DNA from: Sphaerodactylus townsendi
Taxonomy: Eukaryota
Direction of reading: 5' to 3'
Assembly: GCF_021028975.2 (NCBI RefSeq)
Contig: NC_059439.1
Location: 34,255,744 to 34,288,000, forward strand
DNA: 32,257 bases
Below the pieces are notes generated by a model. It did no database searches and was not told where the DNA came from. It saw only the letters and a program-made list of their open reading frames with translations. Of this stretch, positions 3,484 through 32,257 are shown one piece after another. A program made the position numbers and the translations under genes. Position 1 is the stretch's first letter, and the number at the start of each line of letters is the position of its first letter.

Positions 3484-4385
3484 TCAATATTTTCTCCTCA
3501 TGAGCTGTTCTTTTTTGTTCAGATGAGGCCTCAACACAATGATGAAGCATTTGGGAGAAAAGATGCAACCCAGTAGTCCAGCCCCAGAAGCCAAGATGGA
3601 GAAGATCTCCACGGCCACCATCTCTTTTCCTCTTGTGCTCAGGTAAGTTGGAATGAAGGACAGCCAAACGCTGCAAAAAACCAACATGCTGAAGCTGATG
3701 AACTTGGCCTCATTAAAACTGTCAGGTAATTTCCTAGCTAGGAAAGCCACAGCAAAGCTAATGGTGGCCAGGAAACCCAGATAGCCCAGGACGCAGTAAA
3801 ACATGCTCACTGACCCTTCATTGCATTTCACTGTGATTTCTCTGCTCACCAAATGCATGTCCAGATCAGGAAATGGAGGGGAAATTGCCAGCCAAACAGC
3901 ACAGATACCCGCTTGAACAAGAGAGAGGGAAGTGACAACAGGAAATGCAAACCTTTTCCCCCTCCACTTTCGGAAATTAGTTCCTGGCTTGGAGGCCATG
4001 AAAGCCACCACCACTGTGACAGTTTTGGCCAAGACAGAAGATACCGCCACTGAGAAGATAATACCAAAAGCTGTTTGTCGGAGAAGGCAGGTCAAACTGT
4101 TAGGCCGTCCAATGAAGAGTAAGGGACAGAGGAAGCAAAGAAGGAGAGAGAGAAGGAGAACATAGGTGAGGCTCCGGTTGTTGGCTTTGACAATGGGAGT
4201 GTCCCGGTGCTTGATGAAGATTCCGAACACTAGAGCTGCGATCAGAGAAAAGGAAAGAGCCAAGAGAGATAAAACAATGCCCAAAGGTTCTTCAAAGGAC
4301 AGGAAATTTGTGGTCTTGGGAAGACATTGATCTTGGTCATTATTTGGATAGCGATCTTCTGGGCAACTGACACAGTCATCCATGT
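3484..4385 (-). CDS. V2R gene A exon 6 (7TM domain, stop codon)
   Basis: tttcag|AC acceptor; 902 bp. Class C GPCR motifs [49 protein letters not shown]. Confidence 0.97.
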
Positions 4386-6385: not shown

Positions 6386-6613
6386 CTGTGTCAAATTTTT
6401 GTGCCACTCAATTTTGCTGTCCTCCAGGATCAGCTCTCGGCCTGGAGGAGCCCGAGGATCCAGTCTTCCCACCTGGACTTTAAAATAGGAGTTATTTGGG
6501 AAGGTGACCAAGTTTCTGACATGAAATCCACCTTCTATTTCTCGGTGATCATTAAAGGCAATTTCATCTCCTGAGGTGGTGTTGAATGAGATCCTCTGGA
6601 GAAATGAGTGGAG
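6386..6613 (-). CDS. V2R gene A exon 4
   Basis: cctctag|CTC acceptor and CAG|GTGGGG donor; 228 bp, open. LHSFLQRISFN...VTFPNNSYFKVQVG...IEW. Confidence 0.95.
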
Positions 6614-6804
6614 CTAGAGGGAAGAGAGAAAGAAATGCTAAGCGTTGGGGTCTCATTTTGTTGCTGAGATTTTTTTTCAAACAAGTTGCCAAGTTCCTTT
6701 ACTTTAGGCGGAAACTTGCAACTGAAAAGTCGTGGGAATGGAGAACAGCCCACTTTACCAACAGATGCAAGCAGAGAGTGGCAAATTAGGATGAGTGTAA
6801 CTTT

Positions 6805-7063
6805 GGCCCTTTCCCCACTTACCGTTTGCGGCGCACCACTCTCAGCGCGAGTCCTTTCTGGCTCGGGGTTGTGTTCCCCATTGCCGTTTTTTCAGCAGCA
6901 GAAATGGTGCTGTTTTTTCAGCAGCAGAAATGACACGCGCTGGGGGAGAGTGGCAGAGTCGGGGCGGTTGCGTTGTCGCTACCTGGACTCGTGGGGAGCG
7001 CCGCTGGACCCCGCGCTATTTGGGGAGAGTAGAGCGCAGCAAACGGTAAGTGGGGAAAGGGCC
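6805..7063. mobile_element. PIF/Harbinger-type MITE
   Basis: Long TIR GGCCCTTTCCCCACTTACCGTTTGC; 3-bp TSD TTT. Confidence 0.8.
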
Positions 7064-7267
7064 TTTCTCAGCTAGTTTTGTAGTTGAAAGAATGATTCAT
7101 GGGAGAATAGGTGTGTGAAGAGGTTGCTGGGGGTACAGCATCAGGCAAATTCACACTAGCCTGACAAGGCCTTTGACCTCCGGATAGGAAACCAAAAGGC
7201 TTTGAATAAATTACCCAAAAGGAAACTAGTAGCCAAACAGTGGGTAGAACAAAGAATTGGCTTACAG

Positions 7268-7904: not shown

Positions 7905-8326
7905 GCTTACAGCATGGCCAGGAAATGTTTACCTGAAAACCCAGGAGAGGGAACAAAGGATATACTAAGCCAAGCCGGGCAGGAGGGAGCATCACCCGAA
8001 CCCAAGTCTGAAACGAAGCCTGCCAGGAAGCGTGCCAGTTAGCTAAGAAATATCCGTATCAGAATGTTTTCTCATTTTCTGGGTTTTTTAAAATAAAGAC
8101 AGGCGTGGTCACCCCCTCCCCCAATTCCTGGTCTTGTGACAAGGCAGTTACAAGGTTTCATGGCACTGATTTCTGCAAGGAATCAAAATGAGTCTGAGAA
8201 GATGGGGCAGAGGTAGGCTCCACCACTTTGCAGACATTTTGTCGAGCAAAGGCATGTGGGCTATTGCATGCCAAACCACCCATTGGTATCTAGGCCATTA
8301 TTTTTTTCTCAGAGGGGACGAATTAC

Positions 8327-9214
8327 CTGCCAAGGTTCTATGTTCACACATTCCAGTCTGTGTTCTTCCTCCCGTGCTCTACGGTTGGTGTGAGATGAAC
8401 ATAGGGCCTGCAGTGCATGTGTCACCGCATAGACAGCAGTGTAGATGCTATAGCTGTGGCTGGTCATGCTCATTTCAAAGAAAGGACCAGGAAGACTTTC
8501 CAACTTTTCTTCCCTGGTACATCTTTTGTTGCCCTCTGGTGGCTCCGAAGAGGTTGGAACTAGTGAGCAGTCAAACGCTTGCTCCCAGAAATCTTTGAAA
8601 AAACCATTTCCTTTTGGCCAAGTACGTCCTACAGACTGAAGAAAATTTTGGAAACCAGGAGGCTCATTTGAGTGGGGTGAAAAAGACATCGAACCGTGAA
8701 ACATTTGGATGTCCCAGTCTTTCTGAAAGAGATTGAACATGAAATCGATCTGGGCCGTTGTAATCCACACCTTTCCTGCAGAGACCTTTCCCTTATAGCT
8801 GAGGTCTGTCATAGGAATCACCAGTGTGGTTACCCATATAATGGTCGCCAGCCACGTAATGACGGCAGTCTCTCCATACACAACAAATGCGTTCACTTTG
8901 CTCTCCATCACAATGGGAATGTGACTCATCATGTCCTCAAGAACATCAGCTATGCGGTTTAAGCGCATATTTTTGGGCACTATTTCTCTGAAGGCCAAAC
9001 AGACTCCTTTCTGGGAAAGCATGGCCTCCAGAGTTTGGAAGAAATATTCTCCGGCGTCATCGTCCATAGTCATGAGCCCAACCCATTTCCACCTGAAATG
9101 CAGAAGCAACTGGACGATTCCTGCATACTGAAGGGCTTCGTTGGGGACCATGCAGTAAAATGCAGGGGGAAAGGCATTGGAGCTCGCTCCCGTTTCAAAT
9201 GAGCCATAAGAAAA
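8327..9214 (-). CDS. V2R gene A exon 3 (Venus flytrap/ANF-receptor domain)
   Basis: ttcaag|TTT acceptor and CAG|GTAATT donor; 888 bp, open. FSYGS...MVPNE...LLLHFRWKWVGL...SYSIYTAVYAVTHAL...PWQ. Confidence 0.95.
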
Positions 9215-12679: not shown

Positions 12680-12820
12680 GGCCCCTTCCGCACATGCAGA
12701 ATAATATGCTTTCAATCCACTTTCACAATTGTTTGCAAGCAGATTTTGCTATTCTGCACAGCTTCCAAGTTTACTGAAAGTGGACTGAAAGTGCGTTATT
12801 CTGCATGTGCGGAAGAGGCC
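12680..12820. mobile_element. 141-bp Harbinger-type MITE, diverged copy
   Basis: GGCCCCTTCCGCACATGCAGAATAA...TTATTCTGCATGTGCGGAAGAGGCC; TSD eroded. Confidence 0.8.
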
Positions 12821-13004: not shown

Positions 13005-13050
13005 CTCTATAGGAATTAAGGGTCTCCTGTCCACCTGCTCTTCTGTATTA

Positions 13051-13191
13051 GGCTCATTCCGCACATGCAGAATAATGCACTTTCAAACTGCTTTCAGTGC
13101 TCTTTGAAGCTGTGCGGAATAGCAAAATCCACTTGCAAACAGTTGTGAAAGTGGCTTGAAAACGCATTATTTTGCCTGTGCGGAAGGGGCC
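13051..13191. mobile_element. 141-bp Harbinger-type MITE
   Basis: Near-identical to 26871-27011 and 31020-31160. Confidence 0.9.
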
Positions 13192-13350
13192 TCTGTTTAC
13201 TAAAACACAAAAATGGGCTACATCACTGGAAACTCTTTGGTCCTTACCCAACAGCAAATAGTTCAATTTCCATTTATTGTCTTTTCCAGCCCATTCACTC
13301 AAAATTGGTGCCAGGATTTCTTCTCTAAGCTTGTCATATAGGGGGTACTT

Positions 13351-14107: not shown

Positions 14108-14153
14108 AGAGTCACCATCATGATGTGACTACAAGGTAGTAAAATATAACTAA

Positions 14154-14294
14154 GGCCCCTTCCGCACACGCAAAATAATGCGTTTTCAAACCACTTTCAC
14201 AACTGTTTGCAAGTGGATTTTGCTATTCCGCACAGCTTCAAAGAGCACTGAAAGCAGCTTGAAAGTGCATTATTCTGCATGTGCGGAATGAGCC
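14154..14294. mobile_element. 141-bp Harbinger-type MITE
   Basis: Family match; TSD TAA. Confidence 0.92.
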
Positions 14295-15233
14295 TAAGTG
14301 TAGTGCTATAGTAAGGTGTTCTTATGTTCTCCCATGTAACTCTCCCTTAATAGAAAAATTCGTTTGCATAAAACCAGCAACTGTGTCTCTCTCTTTTATG
14401 CTACTCTGCAAATTATATTAAGTTTACAAGTCAACATTAGCTTTTCCTGGTGACTTTTCCTGGTATACTTTTCCTCAGTTTTAGTATTTGCATTCTGTTT
14501 TGCTGGCTTTTGAATGACTCAAAAGCTTATAATGTTAATTGTCTTTTACTCTCATTCATCCTTCCATCACTATTTCTTAGAACAGGATGTGTTTCAACAT
14601 GCGTGTGATTCTCTCTGGGCTTCTGGGTGTATTTTTTTTTAGTTAAAGATTTATGTGATGCTCAAAATCATGATAATGAAAAGTTTCTGGTTTTCTGCAT
14701 TATCTTCTGTAAGCAGAAGTGTCTTCGATGTCATGATAGCCAAACATAAAAATAACCAGAAACTGTAACATGCAAAGATGAGTGTAATCTTATCTCATGT
14801 TGCCATCCCCGAAAGACTGCAAACTTGTCAGTGGGGACTGGCCGTGAATTCCACGGGCATATTTTAGTGTTGGGCGTAATTCTTTTAATGATGTGTGTTG
14901 GTTTCTAACATCCATCCACTTCTTCAGATTTCAGTGGATCTTTTAAAGGGCTCCTTTTCATGCCTTTCCATTGGTTCTGCTTAGTGGGAGACTTTATATT
15001 AAGGTGACCAAATTTTTACTCCTGTAACGCAGGGTGCGCGTGCGCGTGCGCGCCCGCGCGGCTGCAGGAGCACACTGCCTTTTGCGACGCTCCCCAGTCA
15101 GGAAACAGAGAAGCACCCCAGAAGGCAGTGCAGCAGCGCAGGAGGCGCACACGGCCGCAGAAACGCACTGCCTTTTGCGGCGGTCCCCGGTTGAAACTCC
15201 CCACGTTACAGGAGTAAAAATCTGGTCACCTTA

Positions 15234-15679
15234 CTTTAAATGCGCTTACAGACACCCGCCCGTGGCATAGTTGACGTCGATTCTGCCTGCCTCTAGGCCT
15301 AAACTTCACTAGAATAATTACTTTCCTCGCCCTTTCCCGAACAGCGGGAGCACTGGGTCTGTTAAGCCACCATTATCCCCACCCCCCAGTTTCCTGAAGC
15401 AGCCACCCTTGGGTCCATTGCCAGGCAGCGGGGGACTACAGCTCCCATCACGCCCCTTGTTGTGATGTTCGCTCCCCCTGTCTCTCTTGGAGGAAGGGAA
15501 GGGGGAGATATCGCAAGAGTTTGTGCAAAGCAAAGGGGAAAGGGTGTTGTGCGCGTACAAGTTTAGGGACGGCCCGGCCAGCCGCAGCGTTCTCGGAGAG
15601 GAATCGAAACTGTGCGAGGATCCCGTGGGCAGATCGACCTGACCGGCTTCCTCTCTCCTGCTGGCGCCGAGTCACCCCG
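15234..15679 (+). promoter_or_regulatory. Captured CpG-rich promoter/5'UTR with ZNF143/THAP11-type motif and CRE-like site
   Basis: ACTACAGCTCCCA at 15435-15447 and TGACGTC at 15272-15278; CpG-rich; directly upstream of the ZFC3H1-like ATG. Confidence 0.6.
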
Positions 15680-15863
15680 ATGGCAACTCCTGAGGCTGAA
15701 GAGAAGGCGGAGGCGCGCCCCTCGAGCAGCCTCTCACCGAAAGAGGAGGGCGAGCTGGAGGACGGCGAAATCAGTGGCGATGACAATCCCGAAGGCCCTC
15801 CCAAGCCGACCAGCCGAGGTGGTGGCCCAAGGGGCCCTTACGCCAGGTGCAGGCCTCATCCCG
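15680..15863 (+). pseudogene. ZFC3H1: Captured 5' fragment of ZFC3H1 coding exon 1; the ORF reads on into transposon sequence to a stop at 15967 (95 aa)
   Basis: MATPEAEEKAEARPSSSLSPKEEGELEDGEISGDDN...PYARCRPH matches my recollection of the vertebrate ZFC3H1 N-terminus (MAT...SSGLSPKEEGELEDGEISDDDN...PYPRRRPPH). Confidence 0.85.
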
Positions 15864-17100
15864 ACGTTGAAACTGGGGAGCGCCGCAAGGGTAGTGGCTT
15901 TGCAGCCGGCAGAAAGCCCTGCGCTAGCCACTGCCTTTGCATGCCTCTCGTTTCCCCGCCTCTGTGACACGGCAAGAAACAGGGAAGTGCCCCAGAAGGC
16001 AGTGCGGCAGCGCAGGAGGAGCACGCGGCTGCAGGAGCGCATTGCCTAATCGGGACAATTTAAAAACCCCGCGGGACGCAGGACACATTGCGGAAAAGTG
16101 TGAGTGTCCCGCCAAAAGTGGGACGGCTGGTCACCTTACTTTATATGTATATATGAAGGCCCAACTGTGCCCTTGCAACTCTGGTGAAACAACTACTTAC
16201 AGTTTGTTGTATCGAAAATTTTATCAGGATGTTAGAAATTTATTGATTTCACCCGGACACCTCCAAATGGAATGATAACCATTGGTGTAAAAGCAGCTAG
16301 AGGGGACTAGAAATCCCATGCTCCTTTGCAAACCCATGACACAATGCCCAGCACAAAGGACTAATTTGATGTGCAGCTGCTCAGAGAGCTTGAAATAACA
16401 GTTTGACTATTCTACTATGTGTAATGTGACCTTGGTTATAAATCAGGAGATAAGAAGTCAGGGCTTCAGAAAAGGGATGTGTTCCCCAGTTTGGAAATAC
16501 TGAGTTTAAAGGAAAGAACTTTGCAATCAGCTTGGGATTTGACAAATGCACTTTTTTTGAAAGGAAAGGTTGCAATCAATAATTATACAACTGATACACC
16601 CTTATCTACAGACAATCAACTTGGGAAGTGGAAAATATTATACACAAAACTCATAAAATGGGAGAAAAATCTGCAAAAACAATTGAACAACATTTGATGA
16701 AACAGCCAGATAGAGACTTGGGGAAAAGAACTTCAGAGGGAAGAATACAGACGCTTCAGCCTGCACAAATCATAAGTCCATTACTGGTGTATTGCAATGA
16801 ATTAGCAGAGTAAATACTAGGGCAGAAATGCAAGTAAGTTGTTTTGTAGAACTTTATTAGATGACAAATTAATTTACACTAAATATAGGAAGAGCAAACA
16901 CTGTCTATGCAAGTTCTTAATCTGGACCTTTGTGCAGTCTATCTCTCAAGTTTTGCTGGAAGAAGAAAGGAGAGATCTTTCCAGAAGCTCATGTGATTCT
17001 AGGCATATGACTTGAGCAGTAAACTCCTGCTTGATTGAATGAAACAGGCACTTATACCAGCCTAACAGCTACCCCAAGTACTCTTCTGAATGTGAGTAAT

Positions 17101-18008
17101 TCATTCAACTTCATGCTTTCTCATTAGATGTCCTTTTTTATTCTGCTCAGGTCTTACTATAATGACGTAGCATTTTGGGAAGAAGATGCAGGCCAGTAAT
17201 CCAGCACTGGAGGTTAAGATGGAGAAGATCTCCACAGCCACCATGGATTTGCCCTTGGTGCTCAAGTAGGTTGGAACGAAGGAGACCCACACACTGCAAA
17301 AGACCAACATGCTGAAGGTGATGAACTTGGCTTCATTGAAACTGTCCGGTAACTTCCTGGCTAAGAAAGCCACAGTGAAGCTGATGAGGGCCAGGAAGCC
17401 AAGAAAGCTCAGGACACCGTAAAACATGGTGACAGACCCCTCGTTACATTCCAGCACAATTGTCTCTGTCATTGAGTGCCTGTCAAAACCTGGGAAGGGG
17501 GGAGATGTTGCCAACCACACGGTACATATAGTAGTTTGGAAAAGGGAACATGCAAGGACAATGGAACTGGCCAACTTTTTCCCCAGCCATCTCCTCATTC
17601 TGGATCCTGGTTTTGTGGCCAGAAAAGCCAGAACTACAATGACAGTTTTGGCTAAAACACAAGAAACAGCCACTGAGAAGATAATGCCGAAAGCCGTTTG
17701 TCGAAGGAGACAGGTCCACTTCTGAGGTTGGCCAATGAACAGCAAACCACAAAGGAAAGACAAGAGGAGAGAGATGAGGAGAGTGTAGGTGAGATCCCGG
17801 TTGTTGGCTTTGACTATGGGAGTCTCCCGGTGCTTAACAAAGATCCCAAGCACCACAGCCGTGATGACAAAGAAGGAAAGAGCAACAGCGGCCAGGCTGA
17901 TCCCCAAAGGTTCTCCGTAAGTTAAAAAGCTGATCTCTTTCGGTATGCATGAATTCTGGCATTTGTTTGGATACTGACCTTCAGGACACTCAAAACATTC
18001 ATTCATGT
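17101..18008 (-). CDS. V2R gene B exon 6 (7TM)
   Basis: tttgcag|AC acceptor; 908 bp to TGA; full set of class C 7TM motifs. Confidence 0.96.
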
Positions 18009-18328
18009 CTGCAAACATAAAACATTTTTCCTGACTTTACCTTTGATAAAGCAAAGAATAAACAAAGACTCGGAAGGTTCTATAGGGTCCTGTATACTTG
18101 GTCAGTTGAACTTAAGCTGCTGAAGAGACCTTCTGTGGCCCACTTAGGTCTAACTAATTTTACATAGTTTAGCTATAGCAAGTATATCACTAACTATGGG
18201 CTTCTTCTGGAAGATTAACTCCTGGGTTGAGCAAAACATGAAATTCAGGAGATGTCTACAGGGCCATTCTCACCATTCTATGTACATATCGAAATACAAT
18301 GAACATATCTGATAGTCGAATCTCTTAC

Positions 18329-18455: not shown

Positions 18456-18746
18456 CTGGCCCAAATGAAAGATACGTATTAAACGCACCCATTTTCATTT
18501 GCTATCCCAAATGTATATCTTATTGGTGTAATTGCAGTTATAATGGGTTGGCATGGCATGATAGCATGACTTCAGTGGAACATTTGGAGTGCAACGAAGA
18601 ATTGAAACTTTTGTATTCTTTTATTCCGGACAATATAAGCACCATTTCAATCGTTCAAAATGAGGCATTTTGTTAAGGCAGGAACCTTCCAGCTGTAGTG
18701 TCTCTTGAGGCTGAGATCCCATGCCAGTCAAGTCAGCAAAATCAAA

Positions 18747-18887
18747 GGCCCCTTCCGCACACACAAAATAATGCATTTTCAAACTACTTTCACAACTGTT
18801 TGCAAGTGGATTTTGCCATTCCGCACAGCTTCAAAGAGCACTGGAAGCAGTTTGAAAGTGCATTATTCTGCATGTGCGGAATGAGCC
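18747..18887. mobile_element. 141-bp Harbinger-type MITE in gene B intron 4
   Basis: TSD AAA; the empty site is visible in paralog C (atcaaagataaagg at ~29511-29524). Confidence 0.95.
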
Positions 18888-19498
18888 AAAGATAAAGGTC
18901 CAAGCAAGAACTGAAATTAGCAAAGTTGATGTGAAGGGTGTTGATACCTCCTGCCTTATGTTGAACACTTCAAAGCCCCATCCAACAATCAGGCATCTAG
19001 ATGTGACGCCATGCCTGCACGAGCCTGCCACTCCCAAGGAGCCTTTCCATTGGTGTGGGGATGCTAAAATTGCAACCAAACCTCCCCCCTGCTGGAAAGC
19101 CCCCACTGGGCATTATGGACTTAAGTCTGGTGGGAGGGAAGGGAAGGGAAGGCCAATTCTTAGCTGCTTTTAGGCTCCTCGTGGTAAATATATGTGGGGT
19201 GTAAAAACCAGTTATTTTTATTTGATCAAGCTGTTCCTTTCCATGAGGATTCGACTATTGTCATTTTTTCCATGCTATATATCTAAATATATCTTTATTT
19301 ATAATCTCTTCTGCTTGGAAGGAACACAAAGGATGTTAATGACATGACCCAAAATACACTGAACCATTTGTTCAAAGCTTTTCCTAACAACAGTATTAGA
19401 AGAAAATGATGATTTAGCTATTCACCACCTAATCAGCAGAACAAACACAGAGAAAAAAATAGCATGTGAATATTTTATTCCTATTTCAGCACTGGTAG

Positions 19499-21172: not shown

Positions 21173-21767
21173 ATATACATCATATTTTCTCCACTATTAG
21201 TCTATTGAATTAGATGCACCACTCCCAGCTGCTGTAACTTCTGATATGGTTTACTGAAATGGGATTTTAATTGGGATTGCCATTAAAATGACTAGGAAGC
21301 TTTAACTACTGCTAAACATAGAAGCCCACTGCTCCAATCACCTGTTTAAGGTACCCTCCTCAGAGAGGTTTGTTACTCTTCCTCCTGTTCTGGGGAAATT
21401 ACCGGTAGTTCATGGTACGAATACCATGGTAACACATTCGCTTCATCACTTTAGGACAGCTATTAAGAATGTTTCCAACAGCTCTTCTTGGAGGTTAATG
21501 GAAATATGAAGCCAGAAATTTGGTTTAGAGAGATGGTAAGAAATGTATTCAGGGTGTTTTACAGTGATTGAAAAGGCCAGAATTCAATTTGTGGTAAGTT
21601 AACTTGTGCCTGTAGGGGTTTGTTTGTTCCCTATCATACGTTCTCAGAGAAAAGAGGGTGCACATGTTTTGGCCAACAAATCCATTCAACAAATAAGTGA
21701 GTATGATTAGAATGTGGGGATAGGGAGGGATATAAACAAAAATAAATTAATAAAAAATAAATGTCAC

Positions 21768-22628
21768 CTGCCACCCCTCATGGTCTAGGAGATTCCACTG
21801 CCTGCTGTGTGTGGTTACTCTGAGTCTAAAACCGGAGAACTGCCAATCTTGCAAAGCATGTGCCAGAGCATAAACTCCGTTGTAGATGCTGTAGCTGTGG
21901 GCAGTTGTGATGGTTTCAAAAACAGATCCCGGAAGAGCCCCCAACTCCTCCTCTCCTGTGCACATTTCTCCATCCTCTTGGACTGCTGTGGAGTCAGTGA
22001 ATGAACAAAGAAAAGCCAATTGCCAGAATGGTCTGATGAAGCCATCTTTTTCTTCAGAGTCAAGCTTTCTCTCCTGAATAAATTTCTGGAATCCTGAGAG
22101 CTCTACTGAGTTAACTGCGAAGGATATGGCACCGTGGATAGAACTGATGTCCCAGCTACTTTCAAAGGGTAGAGAGGTGAAGTCCATCTGAGCTGTCCAT
22201 ATCCAGAGTTTAGCTGTCTCACAGAGTGGTGTATCCTCAAGTTCTGGGAGTTGGAGAAACAATCTTAACATTATCATGGTATGAATTTCCCCATGGAGGA
22301 CCAAAACTTTGGCAGTGCTTCCCATGACAACTTTGTACTTTTTAACTGCTTCAGCCACTCCCTCTGCAGCTTCACTGGAAAATGCTACTTCTGGCATTAT
22401 GGCTATGAAGTCCACACAGATGCCCTTCTGCGATAGCATAGGAACCATGTCCTGTACAAATCTTTCTCCTGTCTCATCAGACAGAGAAATCATCCCAATC
22501 CACGTCCACTTGAAATATAACAGAAGGTGAAGAATCCCTATATTTTGATGGGTCTGGCTTGGGAACATTTGGTGAAAGAAAACAGCTTCCATTTTGTTAT
22601 CTGTCCTGGGTGCAGAGCCATATGAGAT
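21768..22628 (-). CDS. V2R gene B exon 3
   Basis: tctgtag|ATC acceptor and CAG|GTGACA donor; 861 bp, open. ISYGS...LLLYFKWTWIG...SYSIYNGVYALAHAL...WQ. Confidence 0.95.
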
Positions 22629-24188: not shown

Positions 24189-24769
24189 GTGTCTCTGACT
24201 ATCCTGTTTGAATGGTCGGGCGTTTTGATTGTACATTTGTATATCCCAATGTCAGGGCTGAGCTTGATGAATTCTTCTCTGTCCCCTGCCCCTGCTCTGA
24301 ATGACATGGGGACTATTAATAGTTTCCTTCAATCTTCTGTCTAGGAAATTGGAATAGAGGTGGAAGTAATTGTGGTTAATTTGATGATTGCAGGGATGAT
24401 AATAATTAGTCACAACTGGTGGTAGAAAAAAGCATTGTGGTGTTATTTCCCTTAGATTGATGTTAATATTATATTATTTTCTTGTATAATGCTGTCAAAA
24501 TGCCTGGGGATTTACAAAGTCCAAGGAAACAGCTCCCTGCTTCCTTGAACTCGCAATGGACAGTTCCTGGAGTAATACACTGAACTGAAGCAAGTGATAT
24601 CTGCAGTGTTGCCAGTCTGCCACAAGGACAGGAATCTCCGGTTCCCTGCTCTTAATGACAGCAACAGAAGAATAAAACAAAAATGGCTACCAGATCTATG
24701 GTGTGATGTCACTTTTGGGTAGAATCCAGAAGTGGCAGAATACCTCTCCAGGAAACCCTGGAAACTATG

Positions 24770-25061
24770 GGCCGTTCCCCACTTTCGTCCTTCCCCTCTA
24801 TGCCGGCGTTGGTTCCCATGCCTGCGAGCATCCCAGGGCGCTGCTACCTCAAGGTCAGCCCCTACCGACCCCCGCACTCTGCACGGGGCCATCAAAAGGT
24901 GCCATTGAGAAGAGCGCCTGGGATGCTGCGCACTGAGGGGCGCGACAGCAGCAGCTTCGGGGCGGTTGCGCTGTCGCCGCTCCTCTCAGTGGGGAGTGCC
25001 GAGTGACCCCGCGCTACTCTCCTCGAGTAGCGCGGGGCTTAAGGGAAGTGGGGAAAGGGCC
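24770..25061. mobile_element. Harbinger-type MITE related to 6805-7063
   Basis: GGCCGTTCCCCACTT...AAGTGGGGAAAGGGCC termini; shares internal motifs (cggggcggttgcg, gaccccgcgcta); TSD not clear. Confidence 0.7.
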
Positions 25062-25825
25062 AAAGTTGAGTTTCTGGTGGTTCCTTTAGAGACCTTGTAT
25101 CAGTTCTGCGTTTCTCCACAGATTGAGTCAGACAGAAATACACTGAGACCAGTGGTGGGATTCATAGGTTTTCCACCGGTTCGGGTTGCTCTGAGCTGCT
25201 AAAAGCCCCGTCCTTCCCTCTCCCTAGCTTGGAAGAAGTTCCATCAGCCTTGAGCTGAGCCAGGCCTTTTTTTGGTTCGGGCCCCAAGGAGCATAAAATG
25301 ATCTTGCAATAAAGTAACACAGTTTTAATTACGACGCCCTTAGTTGTTGCCTTATCAGGGGGGCAAATGAGAAATCAAAGGGGACAGAATCTGAAAAAGT
25401 TGTACTGTCCTTTTCTCAAGGAGAATAAACTGCTTATTCAAGGTAGGGTTTACCAGGATGGCAAGAGACATGGTGGTAGAGTCCCATGCATCGTTCCAGA
25501 AGCTGTGCTATTCCCATTTTGTGAGTCCAAAGAATTCCTCACCATTTGCAATTCCCCTGGATTTTTGATATCAGGCTAGATATTCACCTGGATTTTTTTT
25601 TATCCAGGTCCCTGGCAGTCCGTTCTGAGGATATCTCAAGGTGAAAATAGGCAGAGATCTGGATGGGAGATTCTCAAATATAAGTTTGAGAATGAAACTT
25701 TAACAGATGAATCAAGTAATCCTCAAGCTCTTACTCTGGCTGTTCAGTGTATGGAGATGAAATAGGAGCGTTATTTCTTTTTTGCTGACCTACTGGTGGA
25801 GCATTCTTTTGTTATGATTCCAGTT

Positions 25826-26308: not shown

Positions 26309-26870
26309 ATGATTCCAGTTAAAATGATCCAATTATTTTTTCAGGATAATAAATTTAAAACAAGGAAGAATACTCCAAAATAGCTCCAGAAATACAGTTT
26401 CATGGTGCATCTGAAAATGCCAAGTTCAAAGGAAAGCAGTTTGCAATCTGTTTTGGACTGAGAAATGCATTTATTTCCAAGGGGTCTAATAATTTATTAT
26501 ACAACCATTGATACAAACTGAACATGTGGTCCATTACAATCATTAAAAATCCAGAAACAGGCAAAATTACAGGCACAAGCAAGGAGTAAACCCCTCCTCC
26601 TATTCAAAATTATTTAACACTACACAAAGGGCCAAACACAGATCTTCAAGAAGATTGTGAACACTTGAAACCCAAACTGAATGGACTATTGACCAGTTCA
26701 GGAAACCCAGCTACAAATGTGCTTGCTAATTCTCAGACTAAATGCACAGCTCACACAAAGTACACATTGTAATGTAGAAACAATTGGCCCAGAAGAAGAC
26801 ATAGGCCCACCAGTCCCAGCACAGTTGAATATAATACAATGGATCCTGGTATTTGCATCATACAATCTAA

Positions 26871-27011
26871 GGCTCATTCTGCACATGCAGAATAATGCAC
26901 TTTCAAACTGCTTTCAGTGCTCTTTGAAGCTGTGCGGAATAGCAAAATCCACTTGCAAACAGTTGTGAAAGTGGTTTGAAAACGCATTATTTTGCGTGTG
27001 CGGAAGGGGCC
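26871..27011. mobile_element. 141-bp Harbinger-type MITE at the gene C stop codon
   Basis: Family match; TSD TAA (26868-26870 and 27012-27014). Confidence 0.93.
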
Positions 27012-27912
27012 TAAGTTTTTATTTTTATCAACTGTCCTCTTTTGTTCATCTCAGGTCTTTCTATAATGATGTAGCATTTTGGGAAGAAGATGCAGGTCAG
27101 TAGCCCAGCACTGGAGGTTAAGATGGAGAAGATCTCCACAGCCACCATGGATTTGCCCTTGGTGCTCAAGTAGGTTGGAACGAAGGAGACCCACACACTG
27201 CAAAAGACCAACATGCTGAAGGTGATGAACTTGGCTTCGTTGAAACTGTCCGGTAACTTCCTGGCTAAGAAAGCCACAGTGAAGCTGACGATGGCCAGGA
27301 AGCCAAGAAAGCTCAGGACACTGTAAAACATGGTGGCTGAGCCCTCCTTACATTCCAACACAATTGTCTCCGTCATTGAGTGCATGTCAAAACCAGGGAA
27401 GGGGGGACATGTTGCTAACCACACGGTACAGATAGTAGCTTGGAAAAGGGAACATGCAAGGACAATGGAACTGGCCAATTTTTTCCCCAGCCATCTCCTC
27501 ATTCTGGATCCTGGTTTTGCGGCCATGAAAGCCAGAACCACAATGACTGTTTTGGCTAAAACACAAGAAACAGCCACTGAGAAGATAATGCCGAAAGCCG
27601 TTTGTCGAAGGAGACAGGTCCACTTCTCAGGCTGGCCAATGAACAGCAAAACACAAAGGAAAGACAAGAGGAGGGAGATGAGGAGAGTGTAGGTGAGGTC
27701 CCGGTTGTTGGCTTTGACTATGGGAGTTTCCCGGTGCTTAATAAAGATCCCGAGCACCACAGCTGTGATGAAAGAGAAGGAAAGAGTGACAACAGCCAAG
27801 CTGATACCCAAAGGTTCTCCATAAGACAAAAAGCTGATCTCTTTCGGTATGCATGAATTCTGGCCTTTGTTTGGATACTGACTTTCAGGACACTCAAAAC
27901 ATTCATTCATAT
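27011..27912 (-). CDS. V2R gene C exon 6 (7TM)
   Basis: tttccag|AT acceptor; 902 bp to TAG; 7TM motifs near-identical to gene B exon 6. Confidence 0.95.
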
Positions 27913-29098
27913 CTGGAAATGGAAATGCAATGGCAAGCTGATAATAACATGACCAAGTATTCAAGAAATGCTGCTCAGTTGAAGTCAGACAACAGAGCTT
28001 TCTCACTTTCTTTTCAATAATATGAGGACAAATTTAGGATCAGTGGTGCCCTCAGAGCACCCCACAGTTTTGGAGATTGTAGTAAAGGGCTTTCTGGTAC
28101 GCTAAAATGATCACAAACCAAACTGGTGTCTACGGTATGTCTGTCTCTGCCTTTCTTGCCTCTTTTTGTCTCAGTCAACTGACCACTATCTGTAAGAGCA
28201 CTTGCATATCTGTGCATATCGAATATTGTTTCCTTTTCTAATAAAAACCACGGAATCAAGAAGAAGTGTTCAACTTCAAGGAGCTTCAAATGCCGTCATA
28301 AGAACGGTTTTCTGGCAGTAAGAATGACTGAATCAAATGACATTTGCTTCTGTGTAGTTCATTTGTCTGGTTTTTTTTTAGTAAGGAAATATTTGTTAGG
28401 AGATTAATGTCCAAGGATGTCTGTCGAGATATTTTAAACAAAAGTCCAACCAAGGAATCTTCTACATTCATTAATACCAACATTCCAATCTGTGTTAACA
28501 ATGAAAAATAAACAATGTTTATAAACATAAAACATTTTTCTGGCTTTACCTTTGATAAAGCAAAGACTAAACAAAGAAGATTCTTTAGGGTCCTTTATAC
28601 TTTGTCAGTGGAACTTAAACTGCTGAAGAGACCTTCTGTGGCCCACTTATGTCCAACTAAATTTACATATAAAATTTAACTATAGCTGGTATATCACTAA
28701 CTATGGGCTTTTTCTAGAAGATTAACTCCAGAAGATGTATAAAGGCCTATTCTCACCATTCTAATTTTGAACACTTATTTCAGAAATAATGGAACTTGCT
28801 TCTGGATAGGACTGCTATCAGTGAGGAAGGGAGGGGAAACTGTGCCCACGACATGAACTGCCCGTGTGCCCCCTCCCACCCCTGCCCTGCCCCCCAAATC
28901 TCCGACATGCTCCACCCCACCCTCAACACTCCCCGGTCCTGCCTCCGATGCGTGTCTGCAATGGCAGCACCTGGGGTGAGCCGCCCCGGATGTTCCCATT
29001 GTAGCTCCGCCTCTGCCTGCTGCGGATTGCTTCAAGCGTCTACATGCCTTTGTACATACTGAAATACAATGAACATATCTGATACTTGAATCTCTTAC

Positions 29099-30962: not shown

Positions 30963-31019
30963 CACCAAATTCAAGACAGAAAAATCCAAAAAATACTAAT
31001 GACAGCCTAAAAACTGTTA

Positions 31020-31160
31020 GGCTCCTTCCGCACATGCAGAATAATGCACTTTCAAACTGCTTTCAGCGCTCTTTGAAGCTGTGCGGAATGGCAACATCCA
31101 CTTGCAAACAGTTGTGAAAGTGGTTTGAAAACGCATTATTTTGCGTGTGCGGAAGGGGCC
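31020..31160. mobile_element. 141-bp Harbinger-type MITE
   Basis: Family match; TSD TTA. Confidence 0.93.
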
Positions 31161-31297
31161 TTATATTTGAGCACCATTTAGTGATGAAAAATTATAGCCC
31201 ACTGATGGCGACACGCTAGGATTTTGAAGAGAAGAGAAGAGAAGAGCTAGTTTACCATTTCCTGTCCCTGAGTAGGATCACTTAACTTCCTCTATTG

Positions 31298-31443: not shown

Positions 31444-31771
31444 CTCTATTGTCTCCCATCCAAGTACTTTGAAAAAGCCCAATCAACTAAGCTCCCAAGG
31501 GTTGATGAGGTCTGGTAGCTTCAGCCAATCAGGTTAGAGCAAGCTCTGATCAGTTGCCCACTCCAAAATGCAGTGATAAAGCCAAATTACTCTTTTAGGC
31601 TCATTCACGCACAAGCAGAATAATGCACTTTCAAACTGCTTTCAGTGCTCTTTGAAGCTGTGCGGAATGGCAAACAGTTGTGAAAGTGTATTGTCGAAGG
31701 CTTTCACGGCCGGAATCACTTGGGTGCTGTGTGGTTTCTGGGCTGTATGGCCGTGTTCTAGCAGCATTCTC

Positions 31772-31884: not shown

Positions 31885-32257
31885 GAGAATGCTGCTAGAA
31901 CACGGCCATACAGCCCGGAAACCACACAGCACCCAAGTTGTGAAAGTGGTTTGAAAATGCATTATTTTGCGTGTGCAGAAGGGGCCTAAGTTGCTTTGAG
32001 GAATCACAGTTAGCAAGACAAGAGTTACAACTATTTTAATGAATACAATAGTTAGAAAATAAAATCTGGCATAACACCATAAAGATTTCAAATAATGTAA
32101 CCAGTCAGTCTGTATAAGATAGCAAATATAAAACAGCTCCGTTACAGAAACAATTAACAGATACCTTGTGAGGCAGGTTGGGTTAAGAGAGTTAAGAAAG
32201 AACTCTAGCTGGCACAACGACTTTAATATATTTACTCTTTTTACTTTTTTTTCTGCT

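What the first reader, a model, noticed from the sequence alone, without database searches (positions are those of the whole stretch)
15000..16138. Composite hAT transposon that captured the ZFC3H1 promoter, 5'UTR and N-terminal coding sequence
Seen: one 1139-bp unit bounded by TAAGGTGACCA termini and a perfect 8-bp TSD (CTTTATAT). It has three parts: a complete 234-bp MITE, ~630 bp of CpG-rich non-TE DNA ending mid-exon, and the right arm of a related but different element (shared internal motif at 15101-15160 and 15976-16035, different subterminal sequence). The cargo begins with CTTTAAAT, which could be the MITE's target site at the donor locus. Known: 8-bp TSDs mark hAT elements; gene capture by DNA transposons (Pack-MULE/Pack-TIR) is common in plants and much less reported in vertebrates. 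Inference: two non-identical hAT ends moved a housekeeping-gene 5' end into a V2R cluster by a DNA route, since putative promoter sequence is included. Retained CpGs suggest a young or unmethylated insertion.
Basis: partly seen in the sequence, partly recalled or inferred. Interest (0 to 1): 0.88.

Follow-up and report, generated by a model that had tools for sequence, protein, structure and literature searches.

The report
Gecko hAT composite carrying ZFC3H1 start
A 1.1-kb cut-and-paste (hAT-type) transposon unit in a dwarf-gecko pheromone-receptor cluster carries a DNA copy of the upstream region, leader and first 62 codons of the housekeeping gene ZFC3H1; this is a well-documented example of a process already known in vertebrates, not a new kind of element.

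Summary
The 1139-bp unit (15000-16138) has identical 11-bp inverted termini and a perfect 8-bp target-site duplication (TSD). It consists of a complete 234-bp MITE, 632 bp of CpG-rich cargo, and the 273-bp right arm of a different element.

- **Cargo identity.** The cargo is the ZFC3H1 5' region. Its 62 codons are 87% identical to a Sphaerodactylus townsendi protein, which in turn matches proteins named ZFC3H1. The whole 632 bp aligns to ZFC3H1 upstream-plus-exon-1 contigs of other species.
- **Insertion as one piece.** Contigs of two related species carry the exact empty site with a single CTTTATAT. Parental contigs match the window only between 15234 and 15867. This excludes a segmental duplication and a retrocopy.
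- **Likely mechanism (inferred).** The layout is that of maize Ac/fAc "composite insertions" made by alternative transposition: a whole MITE plus its donor flank, one junction without homology, then a truncated second element.
- **Age.** The copy is not very young. It differs from the parent by about 6.5% and has lost 5 of 19 coding CpGs. Its ORF shows no detectable constraint.
- **Expression.** This could not be tested.

Pack-type hAT captures are already catalogued in vertebrates, so this is a new member of a known kind. The scan noted similar gene captures elsewhere in this genome.

The parts
14992..14999 (.). Left copy of the 8-bp target-site duplication, CTTTATAT
   Evidence: Organisms C and D have a single copy of this 8-mer at the empty site (records 18 and 24).
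15000..15233 (+). Complete 234-bp non-autonomous hAT-type MITE. Its 30-bp TIRs lie at 15000-15029 and 15204-15233, around a GC-rich fold-back core.
   Evidence: The TIRs agree at 29/30 positions. The fold has z -7. It is a high-copy family whose members end at 15233, followed by unrelated flanks (loose ends and depth).
15234..15241 (+). CTTTAAAT, the first 8 bp of the cargo. It is probably the MITE's target site at the donor locus.
   Evidence: The parental contig of organism D starts matching exactly at 15234 (record 27). TTTAAA is present at the homologous place in L002 and L001. It fits the hAT target pattern (T at position 2, A at position 7).
15234..15679 (+). Cargo, part 1: 446 bp upstream of the ZFC3H1 start codon (promoter-proximal region and 5'UTR)
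   Evidence: It aligns to the upstream region of ZFC3H1 exon 1 in L002 and L001, with invariant blocks such as the ACTACA..TCCCATCA block at 15436-15451. CpG o/e is 0.72. The transcription start was not determined.
15680..15865 (+). Cargo, part 2: the first 62 codons of ZFC3H1, including the EEGEL-EDGEI motif at residues 22-31
   Evidence: phmmer gives 87% identity to P0001 residues 1-62, E 1e-21. P0001 hits named ZFC3H1 proteins. Homology to parental exon 1 stops at 15865. The EDGEI motif of ZFC3H1 binds ARS2 (PMC9402713).
15680..15967 (+). Chimeric ORF of 95 codons plus stop: 62 ZFC3H1 codons followed by 33 codons read from the transposon arm
   Evidence: There are 8 nonsynonymous and 4 synonymous differences from the inferred parent, pN/pS 0.63, so no detectable constraint. 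Expression was not tested.
15866..16138 (+). Truncated right arm of a second hAT-type family. It has a hairpin module at 15869-15954, a core shared with the MITE at 15973-16047, its own subterminal region with GGGAC repeats at 16048-16127, and the terminus at 16128-16138.
   Evidence: It has no left TIR. 15940-16155 is very high-copy, while 15868-15939 is at about single-copy depth at 80% likeness or more.
16139..16146 (.). Right copy of the 8-bp target-site duplication, CTTTATAT
   Evidence: (empty site in organisms C and D).

Best explanation
**What it is.** The unit is a non-autonomous hAT-type composite (a 'Pack-hAT') that inserted as a single piece at CTTTATAT. It lies between two V2R-type receptor genes of a dwarf gecko. 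It carries a DNA-level copy of 632 bp of the ZFC3H1 5' end: 446 bp upstream of the ATG plus codons 1-62.

**Shown here.**
- Integration used the left terminus of a 234-bp MITE and the right terminus of a different family that shares only the last 12 bp.
- Integration made an 8-bp duplication.
- The site is empty in two related species.
- The parental gene still exists.
- Parental homology covers exactly 15234-15865/7.

**Inferred origin.** A MITE sat at CTTTAAAT just upstream of ZFC3H1. A hAT transposase paired that MITE's outer (left) end with the right end of a nearby second element; this is alternative transposition. DNA synthesis then copied from each inserted terminus inward. On one side it ran through the whole MITE and 632 bp of its donor flank. 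On the other side it ran through 273 bp of the second element, up to a hairpin. The two aborted ends were joined without homology at 15865/15866. This is the 'composite insertion' route described for maize Ac/fAc.

**After insertion.** The copy has decayed as neutral, probably methylated DNA. No function is shown for its promoter or its 95-codon ORF.

**Confidence.** About 0.9 for the shown part and about 0.45 for the composite-insertion route specifically.
For: - Termini, TSD and parts.
- hAT hallmarks: an 8-bp TSD and termini starting TAAGG (the YARNG pattern). Flanks of family members give a consensus of about nTCTAGnn (loose ends at 15233 and 16138).
- Empty site: one contiguous contig each in organism C (559 nt) and organism D (1360 nt) joins 14990 to 16138 with no extra letters (records 18 and 24).
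- ZFC3H1 identity.
- DNA-level homology of the whole cargo to the upstream region plus exon 1 in other species, ending exactly at 15865.
- Parental copy in the same and related species. Contig letters at 15711, 15717, 15728 and 15777 turn the window's residues into those of P0001. Parental contigs of organism D leave the window at 15234 and 15867 (records 27 and 30).
- Composite-insertion architecture in maize: a TE terminus, the TE and its donor flank, joined by NHEJ to the other TE, with an 8-bp TSD (PMC4270019; macrotransposons, PMC9910405).
- The junction shares at most one base of homology.
- The arm begins at a hairpin module.
- The cargo/arm junction contig is at about single-copy depth in run X1 (record 7).
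Against: - The donor locus in this genome could not be read. The MITE upstream of parental ZFC3H1 and a second element facing it are therefore predictions only.
- In organism D the parental contig shows no MITE next to 15234 (record 27).
- Maize composite insertions are kilobases long and usually land close to the donor. Linkage between ZFC3H1 and this V2R cluster is unknown.
- Divergence from the parent (12/186 coding nt; 11/145 in the leader) is higher than flank divergence between species (about 4%). That is odd for an insertion absent from those species, unless CpG decay explains the excess. Five of the 12 coding changes are CpG transitions.
- Organisms A and C show extra cargo-like variants that I could not assign to loci. 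These could mean that an older mobile copy exists elsewhere.
- The 9-bp GTTGAAACT at 15190-15198 and 15866-15874 also allows a template-switch origin.
Confidence: 0.6

Rival explanations
1. Pack-TIR made by template switching and then moved (the gap-filling or FoSTeST route of Tan et al. 2021). A longer progenitor element with a MITE-like left half and this right arm was being replicated or repaired. Synthesis switched by homology into a related MITE upstream of ZFC3H1, read through that MITE's right end into 632 bp of host DNA, and switched back. The chimera then transposed here as a unit.
For: - GTTGAAACT occurs 44 bp from the MITE's right end (15190-15198) and again as the first 9 bases of the arm (15866-15874). 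The segment 15199-15865 could therefore be a filler flanked by a 9-bp repeat.
- The two families share core modules.
- The hairpin-rich core could stall forks.
- Divergence from the parent above the species divergence, and unassigned cargo variants in organisms A and C, would fit an older mobile copy.
- The model is published for multicopy animal Pack-TIRs, which favour GC-rich cargo (PMC8277862).
Against: - No such progenitor and no second copy of the unit was seen.
- The cargo/arm junction is at about single-copy depth in X1.
- GTTGAAACT may simply be a shared family module boundary.
- This route also needs the MITE at the ZFC3H1 donor site, plus one more step than the composite-insertion route.
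Confidence: 0.22
2. Simple macrotransposon. At the donor locus a MITE lay upstream of ZFC3H1 and a second (fractured) element lay inside exon 1. The outer ends were cut and the whole interval moved.
For: - Two different elements sit in direct orientation with matching 11-12-bp termini, and the donor-type 8-mer is retained after the MITE.
- Ac macrotransposons that use Ac and fractured-Ac ends can excise and reinsert in maize (PMC9910405).
Against: - The second element has no left end and begins at an internal point fused to codon 62.
- A truncated transposon inside the first coding exon of an essential gene is unlikely to have persisted.
- The parental exon is intact in the same species group (P0001).
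- Cut-and-paste would also have removed the promoter and start of the parental gene from the donor chromosome.
Confidence: 0.1
3. In-situ filler capture. Only the MITE inserted here. A later break at its right end was repaired with filler DNA (ZFC3H1 5' DNA plus a piece of another element) without any transposition of the cargo.
For: - Most single-copy animal Pack-TIRs arise by transposition-independent gap filling (PMC8277862).
- The outer TSD would then be the MITE's own.
- CTTTAAAT differs from the TSD by a single base.
Against: - The filler would have to end exactly at an intact transposon terminus abutting the TSD.
- CTTTAAAT is parental sequence, not a mutated TSD.
- No related species shows the MITE alone at this site. 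Organisms C and D are completely empty, and organism B already has the cargo/arm junction.
Confidence: 0.05
4. Artefact or ordinary duplication: a misassembly, a segmental duplication of the ZFC3H1 locus, or a retrocopy.
For: - No listed short-read contig crosses 15233/15234.
- The junction-spanning contigs reach fewer than 31 letters into the repeats.
Against: - Three of the four junctions are reproduced with 0 differences in an independent run of the same species, and the cargo/arm junction also appears in organism B.
- Parental contigs diverge exactly at the cargo edges.
- Upstream non-coding DNA is included, there is no poly(A), and the copy ends mid-exon. This rules out a retrocopy.
Confidence: 0.03

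Closest known systems
Animal Pack-TIRs, especially Pack-hAT (Tan et al. 2021, Nat Commun, PMC8277862): 370 cases in 100 animal genomes, 208 of them hAT. One example is a frog hAT-N8_XT that carries 291 bp of the CAPSL 5'UTR at three sites.
   Same: - Non-autonomous hAT ends enclose a short, GC-rich fragment of a host gene's 5' end, and the parental copy is retained.
- The TSD is 8 bp.
- As in their rare transposition-dependent (multicopy) class, the orthologous site in outgroups holds neither the transposon nor the cargo.
   Different: - The two ends come from two different families.
- The left 'arm' is a complete MITE that keeps its inner terminus and a donor-site 8-mer.
- Only one locus is shown here.
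- The cargo (632 bp) is larger than their median of 224 bp, and it includes upstream DNA and the start codon.
Maize Ac/fAc composite insertions and macrotransposons made by alternative (reversed-ends) transposition (Zhang et al. 2014 eLife, PMC4270019; Sharma & Peterson 2022, PMC9910405)
   Same: - The element is bounded by termini of two separate hAT elements, one of them incomplete.
- One terminus is followed by the whole element and its contiguous donor flank.
- There is a single internal junction with little or no homology.
- The TSD is 8 bp.
- The donor gene is left intact.
   Different: - The size is 1.1 kb, against 10-28 kb in maize.
- The host is a vertebrate and the ends belong to MITEs.
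- On the right side only transposon sequence was copied, with no donor flank.
- The donor configuration and the linkage to the target are unknown here, whereas in maize they were observed directly.
Plant Pack-MULEs and Pack-type elements
   Same: Transduplication of host gene fragments, often GC-rich 5' ends, between transposon ends.
   Different: - The superfamily differs (Mutator, with 9-10-bp TSDs and long TIRs).
- Plant elements are usually multicopy and often carry fragments of several genes.

Membership tests
hAT superfamily (non-autonomous element) | 8-bp target-site duplication | tested here: met
   A perfect CTTTATAT lies on both sides. A single copy is present at the empty site in organisms C and D.
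hAT superfamily (non-autonomous element) | Short terminal inverted repeats that begin with the YARNG pattern | tested here: met
   All three termini read TAAGGTGACCA. That YARNG is the hAT pattern rests on my own knowledge.
hAT superfamily (non-autonomous element) | Target preference nTnnnnAn, often nTCTAGAn | tested here: met
   Both CTTTATAT and CTTTAAAT have T at position 2 and A at position 7. The flank consensus of family members after the terminus is about GTCTAG.. in four runs (loose ends). The published consensus is recalled from memory.
hAT superfamily (non-autonomous element) | A cognate autonomous element that encodes a hAT transposase and has the same termini | not tested
   The window holds no transposase. 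Earlier scan notes report hAT transposases in this genome, but their termini were not compared.
Pack-TIR (transduplicating TIR element) | Internal non-transposon sequence between transposon ends, with an identifiable parental copy elsewhere | tested here: met
   The cargo at 15234-15865 is at low depth, unlike the arms. Parental variants are seen in runs of organisms A-D and match the protein P0001. Parental contigs diverge at the cargo edges. The parental locus in this assembly itself could not be read.
Pack-TIR (transduplicating TIR element) | Mobility of the chimera, shown by several copies with different TSDs | tested here: inconclusive
   One insertion event is shown by the empty sites. 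The cargo/arm junction is at about single-copy depth. Extra cargo-like variants in organisms A and C could not be placed.
Composite insertion by alternative transposition (Ac/fAc type) | Outer termini belong to two separate elements | tested here: met
   The left end is the MITE. The right end has a different subterminal sequence, with only the last 12 bp shared.
Composite insertion by alternative transposition (Ac/fAc type) | Each terminus is followed by its element and contiguous donor-flanking DNA, and the two segments meet at one end-joining junction | tested here: met
   On the left, the complete MITE is followed by 632 bp that start at the base next to its terminus. On the right, only 273 bp of the element were copied. 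The junction at 15865/15866 has 0-1 bp of homology.
Composite insertion by alternative transposition (Ac/fAc type) | The donor locus carries the two elements close together with the used ends facing each other | not testable with these tools
   The rest of the genome is not searchable here. The look-up of encoding contigs has no record for P0001.
Retrocopy (processed pseudogene) | Starts at the transcription start, lacks upstream DNA, ends in poly(A), with a variable-length TSD | tested here: not met
   446 bp upstream of the ATG are included, with conserved promoter-type blocks. The copy ends mid-exon at codon 62 with no poly(A).
Segmental duplication of the ZFC3H1 locus | Homology to the parent continues beyond the transposon ends | tested here: not met
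   Parental contigs of organism D (1435 and 1562 nt) match only 15234-15483 and 15740-15867. The flanks are orthologous and contiguous in organisms C and D.

The most novel reading that the evidence does not exclude
Dwarf geckos may have, or recently had, hAT MITE families that undergo alternative transposition and make small composite insertions duplicating promoters and first exons. This would be the first natural vertebrate counterpart of maize Ac/fAc composite insertions. In this instance the captured ZFC3H1 promoter would still fire and produce a 95-residue protein. That protein keeps the ARS2-binding EEGEL-EDGEI motif and could compete with ZFC3H1/PAXT for ARS2.
Probability: 0.07. Interest if true: 0.8.

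Novelty: new member of a known kind. Interest (0 to 1): 0.45.

Why it matters
In vertebrates, most catalogued Pack-TIRs look like repair accidents inside old, immobile transposons. Cases where the chimera itself was integrated by a transposase are rare: 4 of 370 in the published survey.

This unit is a well-resolved example of that rarer class. It has exact empty sites in two related species, a retained donor-site 8-mer, and a single junction without homology. Together these preserve the order of events and point to alternative transposition between two neighbouring MITEs.

Earlier scan notes report ETNK1 and LIX1L captures in the same genome. Taken together, this suggests that this gecko lineage would be a good place to study DNA-transposon-driven exon and promoter shuffling in an amniote.

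For the gene itself nothing suggests a function. The copy evolves like neutral DNA.

Tried and rejected
- **Other copies in the window.** There are no further copies of the MITE, the arm or the cargo. There is no paralogous empty site in the tandem V2R repeats.
- **Parental locus of the same species.** The look-up of encoding contigs has no record for P0001. The protein searches returned no near-identical ORFs from the same genus. The prediction that a MITE sits upstream of parental ZFC3H1 therefore stays untested.
- **Expression.** No RNA run holds the stretch.
- **Solved structures.** The PDB sequence search with P0001 gave only low-complexity noise.
- **Peptide in the literature.** The ZFC3H1 peptide string is not printed in PMC9402713. 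The paper is used only for the position and role of the EDGEI motif.
- **Synteny.** I looked for a head-to-head neighbouring gene upstream in L002 and found nothing recognisable.
- **Rfam.** No match anywhere in the window.
- **Joints in run X1.** Joints that skip 14990/1 to 16152-16218 looked at first like empty alleles within the species. They have short sides (25-36 letters), different end points and extra letters, and both flanks are moderately repeated. I read them as other copies of the flanking repeat, not as polymorphism.
- **Joints between about 15192 and 15962-15986.** These looked like MITE/arm hybrid elements. They are better explained by family members whose hairpin arm aligns better to the MITE's arm than to the window's diverged arm.
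- **Mammal-like hit.** P0003 (ENA) has a mammal-like N-terminus that could be human. I did not fetch its contig or compare it further.
Full report
**1. The observation**

- CTTTATAT lies at 14992-14999 and again at 16139-16146.
- TAAGGTGACCA starts the unit at 15000. Its reverse complement ends the MITE at 15233 and ends the unit at 16138.
- These are the only exact copies in 32 kb. About 0.75 matches are expected by chance even with one mismatch allowed.

The 234-bp MITE has 30-bp terminal inverted repeats that agree at 29 of 30 positions. It folds much better than shuffled sequence (z -7).

The right arm shares a 75-bp core with the MITE (15099-15173 against 15973-16047, 85% identical). Its subterminal sequence is entirely different, and only the last 12 bp agree.

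The middle part, 15234-15865, has 60% G+C and CpG o/e 0.71. The whole window has CpG o/e 0.36, and the two 1-kb flanks have 0.41 (left) and 0.08 (right).

**2. What the cargo is**

The ORF that starts at 15680 gives 62 residues before the arm begins.
- A full HMMER scan of 1.8 billion representative proteins found four hits. The best is P0001, with 87% identity over residues 1-62 and E 1e-21.
- P0001 is an unnamed UniRef protein of the dwarf gecko Sphaerodactylus townsendi.
- P0001 in turn hits proteins named 'zinc finger C3H1 domain-containing protein' from a sea snake (E 3e-78), the tuatara and a pocket gopher.
- The window ORF aligns directly to the sea-snake protein.
- Residues 22-31 read EEGEL-EDGEI. 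This is the position where ZFC3H1 carries its ARS2-binding motif (PMC9402713).

At the DNA level, window 15246-15865 aligns over its full length to two Logan contigs of other species. These contigs carry ZFC3H1 exon 1 with its upstream region: L002 at 75% identity and L001 at 74%. The upstream part holds invariant blocks, such as the ACTACA..TCCCATCA block at 15436-15451. Homology ends exactly at 15865, where the parental exon goes on coding.

So the cargo is 446 bp of upstream region and leader plus codons 1-62. The transcription start was not mapped, so 'promoter' remains an inference from position and conservation.

**3. Evidence from other genomes (contigs of four runs, 80% likeness or more)**

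*Same species (organism A, run X1).* Contigs with 0 differences cover 14500-15028, 16109-16640 and 15751-15888. They reach 29, 30 and 23 letters into the repeats. This is what unitigs do at a repeat edge, but it is just short of the tool's 31-letter rule. No listed contig crosses 15233/15234.

*Organism B.* It has the identical left flank and the cargo/arm junction with 1 difference.

*Organisms C and D.* Each has one contig that runs from 14990 straight to 16138 with no extra letters (559 nt and 1360 nt). This is the exact empty site with a single CTTTATAT. The flanks differ from the window by about 4%.

*Parental contigs in organism D.*
- A 1435-nt contig matches the window only from 15234 onward. 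Its other 1185 nt are unlike the window, so there is no MITE next to it in D.
- A 1562-nt contig matches 15740-15867 and then runs on unlike sequence.

The copied segment is therefore exactly the cargo. Sequence outside the TSD is not part of the duplication, and CTTTAAAT belongs to the parent. L002 and L001 also have TTTAAA at that place.

*The transposon families.* Both are very abundant. Thousands of contigs were laid, and many end at 15233 or 16138 followed by unrelated flanks. The consensus of those flanks is about nTCTAGnn, a hAT-like target preference.

**4. The parent in the same species group, and the age of the copy**

Contigs in all four runs read C, C, G and A at 15711, 15717, 15728 and 15777. 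Applying these letters turns four of the window's eight deviant residues into those of P0001. Each of the other four needs one base change.
- The inferred parent differs at 12 of 186 coding positions.
- Eight of these are nonsynonymous and four synonymous (pN/pS 0.63).
- Five are CpG transitions, and coding CpGs fell from 19 to 14.
- In the leader, one contig variant in organism A differs at 11 of 145 positions and another at 3 of 145.

The copy therefore evolves without detectable constraint and has probably been methylated. It is roughly as old as the split from organisms C and D, not very recent.

Some points stay unresolved:
- Which variants in organisms A and C belong to which locus.
- Whether organism C holds a second copy elsewhere.
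- Why every contig in the four runs reads G at 15631, where the window has A.

**5. How it was made**

*Shown.* A canonical hAT-type integration placed the whole 1139 bp here, using the MITE's left end and the other family's right end.

*Not consistent with the simple picture of two elements flanking a fragment.* The second element has no left end. It is fused at an internal point to codon 62 of an essential gene whose exon is intact in the parent.

*The model that fits.* The layout fits the composite insertions described for maize Ac/fAc (PMC4270019). There, the ends of two neighbouring elements are used together. DNA is copied from each inserted end inward, through the element and into its donor flank. 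Copying aborts, and the two ends are joined by end joining. The product is bounded by an 8-bp TSD, and the donor is left intact.

*Applied to this unit.*
- The left segment is the whole MITE plus 632 bp of its donor flank, beginning with its donor target 8-mer.
- The right segment stops after 273 bp, at the far side of a hairpin (15869-15954, -23.5 kcal/mol, z -2.4).
- The junction shares at most one base of homology.

*Main rival.* The main rival is template switching inside a longer progenitor element followed by transposition, the FoSTeST model of PMC8277862. It is favoured by the 9-bp GTTGAAACT at 15190-15198 and 15866-15874, and by divergence that looks somewhat too high for an insertion absent from organisms C and D. 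Both models need a MITE next to ZFC3H1 in the donor chromosome. This could not be checked because the rest of the genome is not searchable here.

**6. Context**

The window holds three V2R-type genes on the minus strand. Their 7tm_3 exons lie at 3487-4383, 17104-18018 and 27014-28006, and ANF_receptor exons lie at 8312-9151 and 21750-22592. The unit is intergenic, about 1 kb beyond the 3' end of the middle gene. The cargo points towards that gene, in the convergent orientation.

**7. Comparison with what is known**

Pack-type capture by TIR transposons in animals has been surveyed: 370 cases in 100 genomes, 208 of them hAT. Most are single-copy products of transposition-independent gap filling. 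Only four are clearly transposed families, including a frog hAT that carries a 5'UTR fragment (PMC8277862).

This unit belongs to the rarer, transposase-integrated class, and it is unusually informative about its origin. A full-text search found no report of Ac/fAc-type composite insertions in a vertebrate. That is only absence within the library searched.

Earlier notes of this scan describe other gene captures in the same genome: ETNK1 by a hAT and LIX1L by a Tc1/mariner. They also describe modular hAT MITEs that share a hairpin core. I used those notes as leads only.

**8. Verdict**

The mechanism is refined to alternative transposition giving a composite insertion. This is a new member of a known kind, of moderate interest.

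Noticed in passing
window 14141-14298 (also 12680-12814, 13048-13192, 18745-18891, 26867-27025, 31017-31163, 31595-31674, 31936-31992): A second, roughly 150-bp palindromic MITE family has termini that begin TAAGGCCCC. Five full-length copies 95-98% alike, a sixth at 86% and two shorter fragments lie in this 32-kb window. One of them reaches the edge of the 7tm exon at 27014-28006. It looks hAT-like and recently active.
   Followed up: partly
window 14860-14999 and 16147-16240: Both immediate flanks of the unit are moderately repeated in all four runs (raised depth). They are bracketed by a perfect 12-bp inverted repeat (14902-13 / 16227-38). The composite may have landed inside an older small fold-back element. 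Short joints in run X1 that skip the unit probably come from other copies of that repeat.
   Followed up: partly
window 15523-15704 in run X5 (organism C): Organism C has two contig variants of the leader part (6 and 16 differences from the window) but only one contig for the coding part, at about double depth. Its site here is empty. It may carry a second copy of the cargo elsewhere, or two very different haplotypes.
   Followed up: no
window 15631: The window reads A, while every contig in all four runs, including the same species, reads G. This is either a private variant or an assembly error.
   Followed up: no
window 15436-15451: An ACTACA..TCCCATCA block is invariant upstream of ZFC3H1 in three species and resembles a ZNF143/THAP11-type promoter motif (from memory). 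The window copy has C at 15442 where the parental contigs of the related runs read T, inside the TTCCCA core.
   Followed up: partly
window 6781-7160 and 24761-25160: These are two further CpG-rich islands, 75% alike over 112 bp, with internal inverted repeats. They lie at equivalent places in two V2R repeat units. A one-mismatch copy of the terminus (GAAGGTGACCA) lies at 6500. They are possibly other GC-rich fold-back MITEs.
   Followed up: no
window 3487-4383, 8312-9151, 17104-18018, 21750-22592, 27014-28006 (minus strand): Three tandem V2R-type (family C GPCR) genes have open 7tm_3 and ANF_receptor exons (Pfam E 1e-84 to 1e-18).
   Followed up: partly
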